Source of the DNA: Anthoceros angustus
Lineage: Eukaryota > Plantae > Anthocerotophyta
Assembly (NCBI GenBank): GCA_010909165.1
Contig: MU008179.1
Location: 682,001 to 746,000, forward strand
Length of the DNA stretch: 64,000 nucleotides
Direction of reading: 5' to 3'
Position numbers and translations under genes: made by a program. The notes under the pieces were generated by a model. That model did no database searches. It had not been told where the DNA came from and saw only the letters and a program-made list of their open reading frames with translations. Shown here one piece after another: positions 48,834-51,791 of the stretch. The number at the start of each line of letters is the position of its first letter. Within the stretch, counting starts at the first letter, position 1.

Positions 48834-51791
48834 TTACCCAGCATCCTCCATTTCATGGTCGTTGTCATTGTCTCCATCGAAGTACTCGTCGTCCCGTTGA
48901 ACATGCTTATCTTGAACATGCTCTGCCAAAACGTACCTGCCGGAGGTAAAGACCTTGCGAAAATTACACCAATAGCAATTCAAACTATGAATGAATAACA
49001 TGCGCCGCGACTTACGGTTGATGCGCTCATCCGGGTTCGTCTCATCCTCGTCAAACTCTGGGAACCAGGTGTCTGGAGGCAGCTGCAGTCATCACGCAAA
49101 TGTTTAGGAGCACGAGTCACACATCGCAGAACTAGAGTCCAAGGTTGCGGGAAATACCTCCTGCATTTGTACACTCGGGGCATGTGCAAGGCTACGCAGA
49201 TTCTCCAGAACCTGCCTCTGAATACTACTGAGGTACTTTACGCTATTCATGTTCTCCTGCACAACAAACACAAAACATTGAGAAAAAGCCTGCACTTGAC
49301 GTAGGGAACAGGCTGAGCAGAGCATTCACCATGTGATTCCCAGGATTGACTTTGAGCGTGTAATCAGGCTTGAAGTACTTCAGATAGTCGTTGTCTGGGA
49401 TGTCTGCATGAGATGACGAGTGTTTGAACATATGGCCCCCTGAGCACCTTCCAAAGAGTTCAGCTCCAAAAGAGTGAGGCAGTCCTACCGTCTGCAAGCT
49501 GTGTATTCACAAGAGCTCCTGTCTCCACTGTCCAGCAGCGAGCAACATTCTCTTTTGTGTACCCTCCGCCTCCAGTCACCTAGAACAATGCCAGACATGT
49601 TTTGAGGAGATACCAAGCAAGCGATAAAACAACAGAAAGAGTAGGTACAAAGGGGAGTATTAGGAAATGCCAGATGTCAGGATAATCACCAGCAGCGGTA
49701 TGTTGAGCTTCTTCACATACTTTACACATTCAGAATGACCTACAGTCAAAGGAATAACAATTCCAACTAAGTAGCTCGCCTAGAAGACATAATAAAAAAA
49801 CAAGAAATCAAGAAATAATGATATGGACTTACAGAATTTGATCTGCAAGAAAACATAACGAATTTAGGTACCGTCTATAGAAAGATTGAAGCAACCAAGG
49901 CGGTCCCCAGCTAGTGAATCTGCCCCGCATTGCAGAACTATGGCCCCCGGTTGATACATTTCAACCACCTTGGAAATTACCTGCGCTGACAGTTGCCCAT
50001 TCTTTATTCAGCATCTCAAAACATTTACTCGGCGAAAGTTGCTTTCCTCAAGAACAGCTACCCAATGGCAGCTGCAACCAGACAATAAGATGAAGGGAAG
50101 TGTCATAAAGTAAACAAACTACAAGTCCATTCCACAGCTATGTAGGAAAGACCCAAGGAGGAGACTGACTCACTGCTTCAAACATTTGCTTGAAGCCTTT
50201 ATCATCAATGCCATCTTTCAAGGGCACATTTACAGCATAATATTTCCCATCTTGTGATCCAATGTCCTGTTAGGCACAGCTGACAATCAGAGACCCACCA
50301 TTGGAGGAAAGACGTCTTTGAATCAGTCATAGAAGCTACTTCTTGTCGCATAGATACACCAAGCATATGCTAGACTTACTTTCACGTCGCCCGTACCAGG
50401 GAAAAAAAAATCTCCGTACTTGTGAAAACTGACAGTCATAACCCTGAGAAAAGGAGGTCCAGTACTTGCATGAGAAGTAAACTCAAATCTAGCATAACAC
50501 TCCATGGCAAAAATGAGTGCTAAAACTTCTTGAGACCATTCTGCCATGAACTTCTTCCACAGCAACATACCTGTCAGTAAGATAGAAGGCTTCCTCAACA
50601 CCATCCCCATGGTGGATGTCAATGTCGATATAAAGAACCCGAGCAAAATATTTAAGTAGCTCCAAGATTCCGAGCACCAGATCATTCACATAGCAGAAGC
50701 CAGATGCCTCACACTTCTTAGCGTGATGCAACCCACCGGCCCAATTGATCGCAATATCACAAGACTGATTGTTTAACCTTCGAGCAGCATCTGTCCAATA
50801 GAGCAGGGGAAGATTATTAACTGCTCACGTCACTGCAGAAAGGAAGTTAGCTGTCTGTGAGAGCAAGGGATATGTCACATGATGCCCAGTACAAACAATA
50901 TCACTACATACCGATTGTCCCACCAGCATAAATCTGACAAAACTCAAACAAGTTGTCAAACACTGGACAATCCTCGCCCATATTATCTGCAAACATACAA
51001 TATTGTCCTACACGGTGAAGAGGTCAAGCAACACCAGGACCTACCGATTGTCCCACCAGCATACATTTGACAAAACTCAAACAAGTTGTCAAATACTGGA
51101 CTGTCATGTCCCGGCCCCAGCTTATCTGCAAAAATACAATATGGTCCTACCCCGTGTAAAACAGAAAAACAGAACACAAAAAAAGAAGCAACTGCCCATT
51201 GAAGAATACTGCAAACTCCAGATTAAAAAAAGGAGAAAAGCCACCTACACAGCAAGGTCATTCAACAACAACTGACGAGGTGGGAAGAATACATTTCTGC
51301 AGCTCCTTCTCATACCGATCGACATGATCGGGTGTGATTCGATGTAAAAACTCCACGTAGTCGGATGAATGAAATTGCGCTAGCTCCATGGGATCTGCTC
51401 TGTGAGGCCTCTGCCGAATGAAATTGACAGACTTGAGATCAGGTGAAGGTGGAAGCGGCAACCAAAGTGCTAGGATGCTGTTCGCATACCACTCAACTTA
51501 CATATATTTCCATTTTGTGATGCAGATCATAAGCAAGAACAAGGTTATGAGTCATGCACAATCGATGTGGCTTCATCGGATGATTCGGGCCGTAGTAAAT
51601 ACCACCGATGTCTCCTGCGCAACGATCTAATTCTGGTCAATAACAGCTCGCACAGGTGAGAGCAGTTATAATCCTCCACCACAGGCTCCATGACCAGGAC
51701 GGACACAAAAACTGTAGCGCAACATGAGAAATTCTGCGACGCAGGAAGGCTAACCATCGTAGAAGTAAGCAACACGATCCTTGGCCGGCAT
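48834..51791 (-). CDS. HDA9: Histone deacetylase 9 (class I RPD3, HDAC3-like), ~14 exons
   Basis: [114 protein letters not shown]-terminus [21 protein letters not shown]. Confidence 0.96.
50912..51125 (-). other. Tandemly duplicated HDA9 exon 4 (4a 51045-51125, 81 nt; 4b 50912-50986, 75 nt)
   Basis: 4a [27 protein letters not shown], 4b [25 protein letters not shown]. Both have intact tgcag| and |gta sites and are phase 1-1. Intervening intron is 58 nt. Confidence 0.9.

What the first reader, a model, noticed from the sequence alone, without database searches (positions are those of the whole stretch)
50912..51125. Candidate mutually exclusive exon pair in HDA9 that swaps the substrate-binding L2 loop
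Seen: exon 4 occurs twice. 4b is canonical ([10 protein letters not shown]…CQIY) and 4a is a variant ([12 protein letters not shown]…CQMY). Both keep the reading frame (75 and 81 nt, phase 1-1) and intact splice sites, and ~25 nt of upstream acceptor region is also duplicated. Divergence is concentrated at the 5' end as substitutions and a clean 6-nt in-frame indel, which does not look like sequencing error. The intron between them is only 58 nt. Known: the Asp of GEDCP is the class I HDAC L2-loop residue that grips the substrate backbone (HDAC1 D99/HDAC8 D101). A short donor-to-branch-point distance is a classical steric mechanism for mutually exclusive splicing, which is rare in plants. Inference: one gene makes two HDA9 isoforms with different active-site rims (Asp kept, Cys lost, loop +2 aa), possibly altering substrate, partner or redox sensitivity.
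Basis: partly seen in the sequence, partly recalled or inferred. Interest (0 to 1): 0.85.

Follow-up and report, generated by a model that had tools for sequence, protein, structure and literature searches.

The report
Swappable active-site loop in hornwort HDA9
A probable hornwort's gene for a chromatin-silencing enzyme carries two either-or copies of the piece that forms the rim of its active site; the unusual copy, with a longer loop seen in no other plant checked, is the one its RNA most clearly uses.

Summary
Confirmed. The minus-strand HDA9 gene (probably Anthoceros) has tandem exon-4 copies: 4a (81 nt, KLGPGHDSP) and 4b (75 nt, canonical NMGEDCP), same phase, 58 nt apart. A related species' DNA contig holds both, so this is no assembly error. 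RNA contigs of three organisms splice 4a to exon 5 and two show exon 3-4a; none joins 4a to 4b. A 4b-only mRNA is inferred in one run from contig breakpoints, not seen directly. Two runs retain the 58-nt intron (premature stop). Two corrections: the variant 4a, not 4b, is the best-attested form; and two relatives' 4b also lost the Cys, so the conserved difference is the +2 loop, not redox. All 201 plant HDA9 proteins keep D-C-P and none has +2; 13 non-hornwort plant loci have one exon 4. A +2 insert at this place governs inhibitor sensitivity in Toxoplasma HDAC3. Function is untested. The scan noted other tandem exon pairs in this genome, not this one. New variant of a known kind.

The parts
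48834..51791 (-). HDA9 (HDAC3-type class I deacetylase) gene, 14 coding exons plus the extra exon-4 copy
   Evidence: model; exon 5 best PDB hit HDAC3; land-plant HDA9 clade, 100/99; exons 1-7 junctions seen in RNA contigs
51293..51410 (-). exon 3; its donor is the shared upstream partner of 4a and 4b
51126..51292 (-). intron 3 (167 nt), U-rich stretch before the 4a acceptor (57% U at -90..-31); predicted branch A at 51155 or 51157
   Evidence: spliced in X1 and X16, also retained in X2
51045..51125 (-). exon 4a, variant L2 loop [11 protein letters not shown] (+2 aa, Asp codon 51105-51103, Ser for Cys)
   Evidence: joined to exon 5 in X1, X2, X16 and to exon 3 in X1, X16; no gap and 1-2 letters changed in relatives
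50987..51044 (-). 58-nt intron between the copies; predicted branch A at 51024 or 51016 (21 or 29 nt from the donor); last 30 nt duplicate the 4a acceptor region
   Evidence: never spliced, retained in X2 and X16, same length in organism C DNA
50912..50986 (-). exon 4b, canonical loop NMGEDCPVF (Asp 50972-50970, Cys 50969-50967); in the intron-retained form its first bases give a stop at 50985-50983 (codon 137)
   Evidence: joined to exon 5 in X2 and X16; exon 3-4b join inferred for X2; stop
50571..50790 (-). exon 5, with the catalytic His pair, the GFCY Cys (partner of the L2 Cys in HDAC8) and the DIDIHH zinc site

Best explanation
A tandem duplication of about 135 nt (exon 4 plus its branch point and acceptor) in an ancestor of several close hornwort species made a mutually exclusive exon pair. 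SHOWN: both copies are intact in two species' DNA; 4a-only mRNA exists in three organisms; 4a and 4b are not spliced together; the 58-nt intron is retained instead, which brings a stop at codon 137. INFERRED: the copies exclude each other because the donor-to-branch distance (21-29 nt) is too short for spliceosome assembly; the upstream acceptor with its U-rich tract is the default, so 4a is the main form; exon 3-4b splicing gives a second isoform in some samples; the retained form is a dead end or an intermediate on the way to 4b. INFERRED for the protein: both isoforms are active deacetylases (Asp and all catalytic motifs kept) that differ in the shape of the active-site rim, which would tune binding of substrate peptides or inhibitors rather than switch activity off.
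For: X1 (no difference from the window on its main contig): one contig exon1-2-3-4a-5-6-7 that skips 4b. X16: exon 3-4a and 4a-5 joints, plus a 183-nt contig 4a end + intron + 4b + exon 5. X2: 4a-5 and 4b-5 joints. X21 (DNA): whole stretch in one piece, no indel in 50912-51125, none of the splice joints. Simulated 31-mer graphs: only adding exon 3-4b reproduces X2's pieces (118 nt 50957-51074; 4b piece ending at 50986; 81-nt 4a; 50-nt 4a-5); no second route gives the 183-nt piece seen in X16; 4a-4b splicing gives 117 and 96 nt. Under 50 nt donor-to-branch is the steric criterion in PMC5740500. 4a changed 1 letter of 81 between the window and organism C, against my rough estimate of 6% in introns (P about 0.04). 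+2 loops that keep the Asp occur in 18 of 276 homologues; HDAC8 C102S keeps full catalytic efficiency (PMC6174833).
Against: Contigs drop rare forms and give no levels, so absence of 4a-4b joins is not proof and isoform ratios are unknown. 4b in organisms B and C carries two amino-acid changes (C->S, E->K) at sites invariant in 201 plant HDA9 proteins, and its divergence fits neutrality (P 0.33). Branch points are predicted, not mapped. No protein or activity data.
Confidence: 0.65

Rival explanations
1. Exon replacement in progress: 4a has taken over as the working exon and 4b is a relic under relaxed selection that is still spliced in leakily; there is no regulated switch.
For: 4a is the only form in X1 and the only spliced partner of exon 3 in X16; B/C 4b has two non-synonymous changes at plant-invariant sites while 4a is nearly unchanged; the whole protein has a long end branch (0.24 against 0.07-0.10 for moss and liverwort).
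Against: 4b keeps frame and splice sites in all three organisms; in the window it is identical in protein to moss, liverwort and lycophyte exon 4; Ser after the Asp and Lys at the Glu site both occur in other class I enzymes (6 and 7 of 338); X2's graph needs an exon 3-4b route.
Confidence: 0.24
2. 4b acts mainly as a poison module: use of the 4a acceptor together with the 4b donor traps the unspliceable 58-nt intron, makes a premature stop and lowers HDA9 output through nonsense-mediated decay.
For: The retained form stands as a contig in X2 and X16, and in X16 it is the only form that holds 4b; stop at codon 137.
Against: It does not explain why 4b keeps a near-intact coding sequence; not seen in X1; in X2 intron 3 is retained too, which fits a splicing intermediate on the way to exon 3-4b.
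Confidence: 0.08
3. Artefact of assembly, or both exons co-included (459-aa protein with the loop-helix twice).
For: The frame allows co-inclusion; a neighbouring 2-kb tandem repeat looks error-rich.
Against: A different organism's DNA contig holds both copies; RNA contigs skip one copy; no 4a-4b joint, and the simulation for it does not fit.
Confidence: 0.03

Closest known systems
Tandem-duplicated mutually exclusive exons held apart by steric interference (9% of human MXE clusters, PMC5740500; OGDH 4a/4b, PMC7969005)
   Same: Homologous neighbouring exons, same phase, donor-to-branch distance under 50 nt, one copy per mRNA, change at a ligand-binding site.
   Different: A plant gene; whole intron only 58 nt; visible intron-retained third product; apparently young; the variant copy is the best-attested one.
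Arabidopsis FLM/MAF1 mutually exclusive exons (PMC3266260)
   Same: Plant case of an either-or exon pair restricted to a small clade.
   Different: There the second exon is described as cryptic and alters an interaction domain; here an exon duplicate alters an enzyme's active-site rim.
Apicomplexan HDAC3 two-residue L2 extension A98-T99 (PMC2715132)
   Same: Two extra residues just before the conserved rim Asp; T99 changes there alter FR235222 sensitivity and basal activity.
   Different: Different residues, independent origin, constitutive rather than alternatively spliced, Cys kept.
HDAC8 C102/C153 redox switch (PMC6174833)
   Same: The Cys after the L2 Asp and the GFCY Cys are both present in the window's 4b isoform.
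   Different: Never shown for plant HDA9 in what I read; absent from 4a and from 4b of organisms B and C.
Land-plant HDA9
   Same: Orthologue; same exon-4 boundaries; catalytic motifs intact.
   Different: All 13 other plant loci examined have a single exon 4; none of 201 proteins has +2 or Ser for Cys.

Membership tests
HDA9 / HDAC3-type class I deacetylase | Groups with land-plant HDA9 | tested here: met
   (100/99); named HDA9 members in those clusters
HDA9 / HDAC3-type class I deacetylase | Catalytic and zinc-binding motifs intact | tested here: met
HDA9 / HDAC3-type class I deacetylase | Deacetylase activity of each isoform | not testable with these tools
   needs assay
Tandem-duplicated mutually exclusive exons | Adjacent homologous exons, same phase, intact splice sites | tested here: met
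Tandem-duplicated mutually exclusive exons | Exon 4a spliced in alone | tested here: met
   X1 contig 3-4a-5; X16 and X2 joints
Tandem-duplicated mutually exclusive exons | Exon 4b spliced in alone | tested here: inconclusive
   4b-5 joint seen; 3-4b joint only inferred from contig breakpoints in X2
Tandem-duplicated mutually exclusive exons | The two exons are not spliced together | tested here: met
   no 58-nt skip in three runs, intron retained instead; contigs can drop rare forms
Tandem-duplicated mutually exclusive exons | Donor-to-branch distance under 50 nt | tested here: met
   motif candidates 21 and 29 nt from the donor; predicted, not mapped
Tandem-duplicated mutually exclusive exons | Both copies under purifying selection across species | tested here: inconclusive
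   4a looks constrained, 4b fits neutrality; tiny counts, close relatives only, difference table incomplete
Tandem-duplicated mutually exclusive exons | Regulated switching between tissues or conditions | not testable with these tools
   only contigs, no library metadata; run differences are confounded with species
Apicomplexan-type +2 L2 loop | Two extra residues before the rim Asp | tested here: met
   PMC2715132
Apicomplexan-type +2 L2 loop | Same residues (A-T) and common descent | tested here: not met
   4a reads G-P-G-H-D; arose from a plant exon-4 copy
Apicomplexan-type +2 L2 loop | Altered cyclic-peptide inhibitor sensitivity | not testable with these tools
   needs assay
HDAC8-type redox switch | L2 Cys present in one isoform only, across species | tested here: not met
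   true in the window; 4b of organisms B and C has Ser

The most novel reading that the evidence does not exclude
The hornwort switches the active-site rim of its HDA9 by splicing, by tissue or by microbial contact, and the 4a loop was selected because it changes sensitivity to microbial cyclic-peptide HDAC inhibitors (or substrate range), converging on the +2 loop of apicomplexan HDAC3.
Probability: 0.12. Interest if true: 0.85.

Novelty: new variant of a known kind. Interest (0 to 1): 0.6.

Why it matters
The L2 rim of HDA9 is nearly invariant across land plants, yet here evolution duplicated exactly this exon, remodelled the loop in one copy and made it the best-attested form while keeping the old one available. 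It is a natural paired experiment on what the class I L2 loop does (substrate, inhibitor, redox), in a transformable bryophyte lineage, and a clean plant case of steric either-or splicing with a visible intron-retained by-product. I found no paper describing it.

Tried and rejected
No hornwort HDA9 turned up in three protein searches and one representative search (best identity 81%). A degenerate DNA pattern for the 4a loop found nothing in metagenome contigs; the 4a peptide was too short for the search for related loci; exon 5 there gave 80 loci, none hornwort-like. Selaginella was not on record, and Ceratopteris and one Logan contig came without DNA. So distribution in other hornwort genera is untested. 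Rejected: assembly error (DNA of another organism has both copies); co-inclusion (no joint, simulation misfit); a conserved Cys/redox switch (lost in relatives' 4b); an ancient land-plant pair (single exon in 13 loci). Contig depths were used only to locate a contig end, not as expression levels.

Full report
Observation. The gene lies on the minus strand, 51791-48834, with 14 coding exons and a second copy of exon 4. Exon 4a is 51125-51045 (81 nt) and 4b is 50986-50912 (75 nt); both have AG and GT ends and phase 1-1. The intron between them is 58 nt, the shortest in the gene (others 73-193). The 30 nt before the two acceptors are 26/30 identical. 4a-only, 4b-only and both-included models are all open (434, 432, 459 aa); keeping the 58-nt intron gives a stop at codon 137. 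The copies differ by 7 substitutions and a net 6-nt insertion in the six loop codons and by only 3 substitutions in the other 57 nt (Fisher P 0.0012, post hoc).

Identity. Exon 5 matches HDAC3 best among solved structures, and the protein falls in the land-plant HDA9 clade (100/99) on a long end branch. Catalytic motifs are intact. The exon-4 Asp is HDAC1 D99 and the next residue C100. The organism is probably a hornwort: earlier scan notes say so, and about 116 Mb of windows, short introns and near 50% GC fit Anthoceros angustus (119 Mb, GC 49.6%, mean intron 173 nt; PMC7027989). This is inference; run labels are coded.

RNA and DNA evidence. Three RNA-like runs from three organisms and one DNA-like run were laid on 50150-51900. 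The RNA label is a guess by the tool, but these runs show intron-skipping joints that the DNA run lacks. X1, whose main contig has no difference from the window, gives one contig exon 1-2-3-4a-5-6-7 that skips 4b. X16 (organism C) joins exon 3 to 4a and 4a to exon 5, and has a 183-nt contig of 4a end, the 58-nt intron, 4b and exon 5. X2 (organism B) has 4a-5 and 4b-5 joints, a 118-nt intron-retaining piece and a retained intron 3. No run has a 4a-4b splice. X21 (organism C, DNA) spans the stretch in one contig with no indel across both exons, which rules out an assembly error. However, X2's 4b piece ends exactly at the 4b acceptor (50986, by bin arithmetic), and a 31-mer graph simulation reproduces all of X2's pieces only when exon 3-4b is added; without a second route the 183-nt piece of X16 results, and 4a-4b splicing gives pieces of 117 and 96 nt. 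The neighbouring contigs are unbroken, so the end of exon 3 is the only available origin. A 4b-only mRNA is therefore likely in organism B, but inferred. Contigs drop rare forms and give no levels; from my own knowledge of such assemblers the minor arm of a short bubble is removed, so 4b may be a hidden minor form in X1.

Mechanism of exclusion. Branch-point-like motifs in the 58-nt intron have their A 21 or 29 nt from the donor; the second is the homologue of the motif 29 nt before 4a. That is under the 50-nt steric limit used in PMC5740500 and fits what the contigs show: the intron is retained, not spliced. 4a has a U-rich tract upstream (57% U) that 4b lacks (39%), a plausible reason for 4a being the default. 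The retained form is either a dead end with a premature stop (X16, where intron 3 is spliced) or an intermediate to exon 3-4b (X2, where intron 3 is retained too).

Conservation. 4a has no gap and 1 (C) or 2 (B) changed letters; one change is probably the synonymous third base 11 nt from the exon end (deduced from where contigs branch; the difference table is incomplete). 4b in B and C has Cys->Ser, Glu->Lys and one synonymous change. So both copies lack the Cys in those organisms, either by conversion from 4a or in parallel, and the conserved contrast is the loop NMGE versus KLGPGH. Counts are tiny: 4a looks constrained (P about 0.04 against a rough 6% intron rate), 4b fits neutrality (P 0.33). 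Outside this lineage there is one exon 4 in all 13 plant loci tested, among them Ceratodon, Calypogeia, Riccia, Diphasiastrum and Nepenthes (some contigs hold only part of intron 3). Low synonymous divergence between the copies points to a young duplication or to gene conversion.

Protein consequence. All 201 plant HDA9 sequences held have D-C-P and the downstream Glu; 200 have the standard loop length and Nepenthes has +1. In the wider family, +2 loops that keep the Asp occur in 18 of 276 proteins and D-S-P in 6 of 338, including LGP-x-x-D loops (L038, L065, P0261). In Toxoplasma HDAC3 a two-residue extension at this place lies on the L2 rim near HDAC8 D101, and changes in it alter FR235222 sensitivity and basal activity (PMC2715132). 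HDAC8 C102S keeps catalytic efficiency; C102 is half of a redox switch (PMC6174833). Hence 4a most likely gives an active enzyme with an altered rim; what it alters is untested.

Verdict. A real, transcribed, lineage-restricted tandem exon pair that very probably works as steric mutually exclusive exons (0.65), with replacement of a fading 4b as the main rival (0.24). The mechanism type is known; its use on the class I deacetylase L2 loop was not found in the literature searched.

Noticed in passing
window 52490-56500: Tandem duplication of about 1.98 kb upstream of the gene; the copies differ by 68 gap events (41 single-base) and 42 substitutions, a pattern like an unpolished long-read copy or assembly artefact.
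   Followed up: partly
L006:2012-2089 (Nepenthes gracilis, P0422): Single exon 4 with one extra residue in the same loop (KLGVDDCP), the only length variant among 201 plant HDA9 proteins.
   Followed up: partly
window 49871-49740 (intron 8): X1's contig ends two letters past exon 8, where exon 9 and intron 8 diverge, hinting at retention or alternative splicing; the intron also holds an AG/GT-flanked 10-nt piece (49842-49833) only 29 nt from the donor.
   Followed up: no
window 48834-51791: The whole HDA9 protein has a long end branch (0.24) compared with moss and liverwort orthologues (0.07-0.10), so faster evolution is not limited to exon 4.
   Followed up: partly
L007:501-1805 (Chara braunii): The Chara HDA9 gene translates directly, without introns.
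   Followed up: no
same genome, other pieces: Earlier notes list tandem duplicated exon pairs in CASTOR/DMI1, STR14, AGPase large subunit and FPG; a genome-wide survey of such pairs in hornworts could be worthwhile.
   Followed up: no
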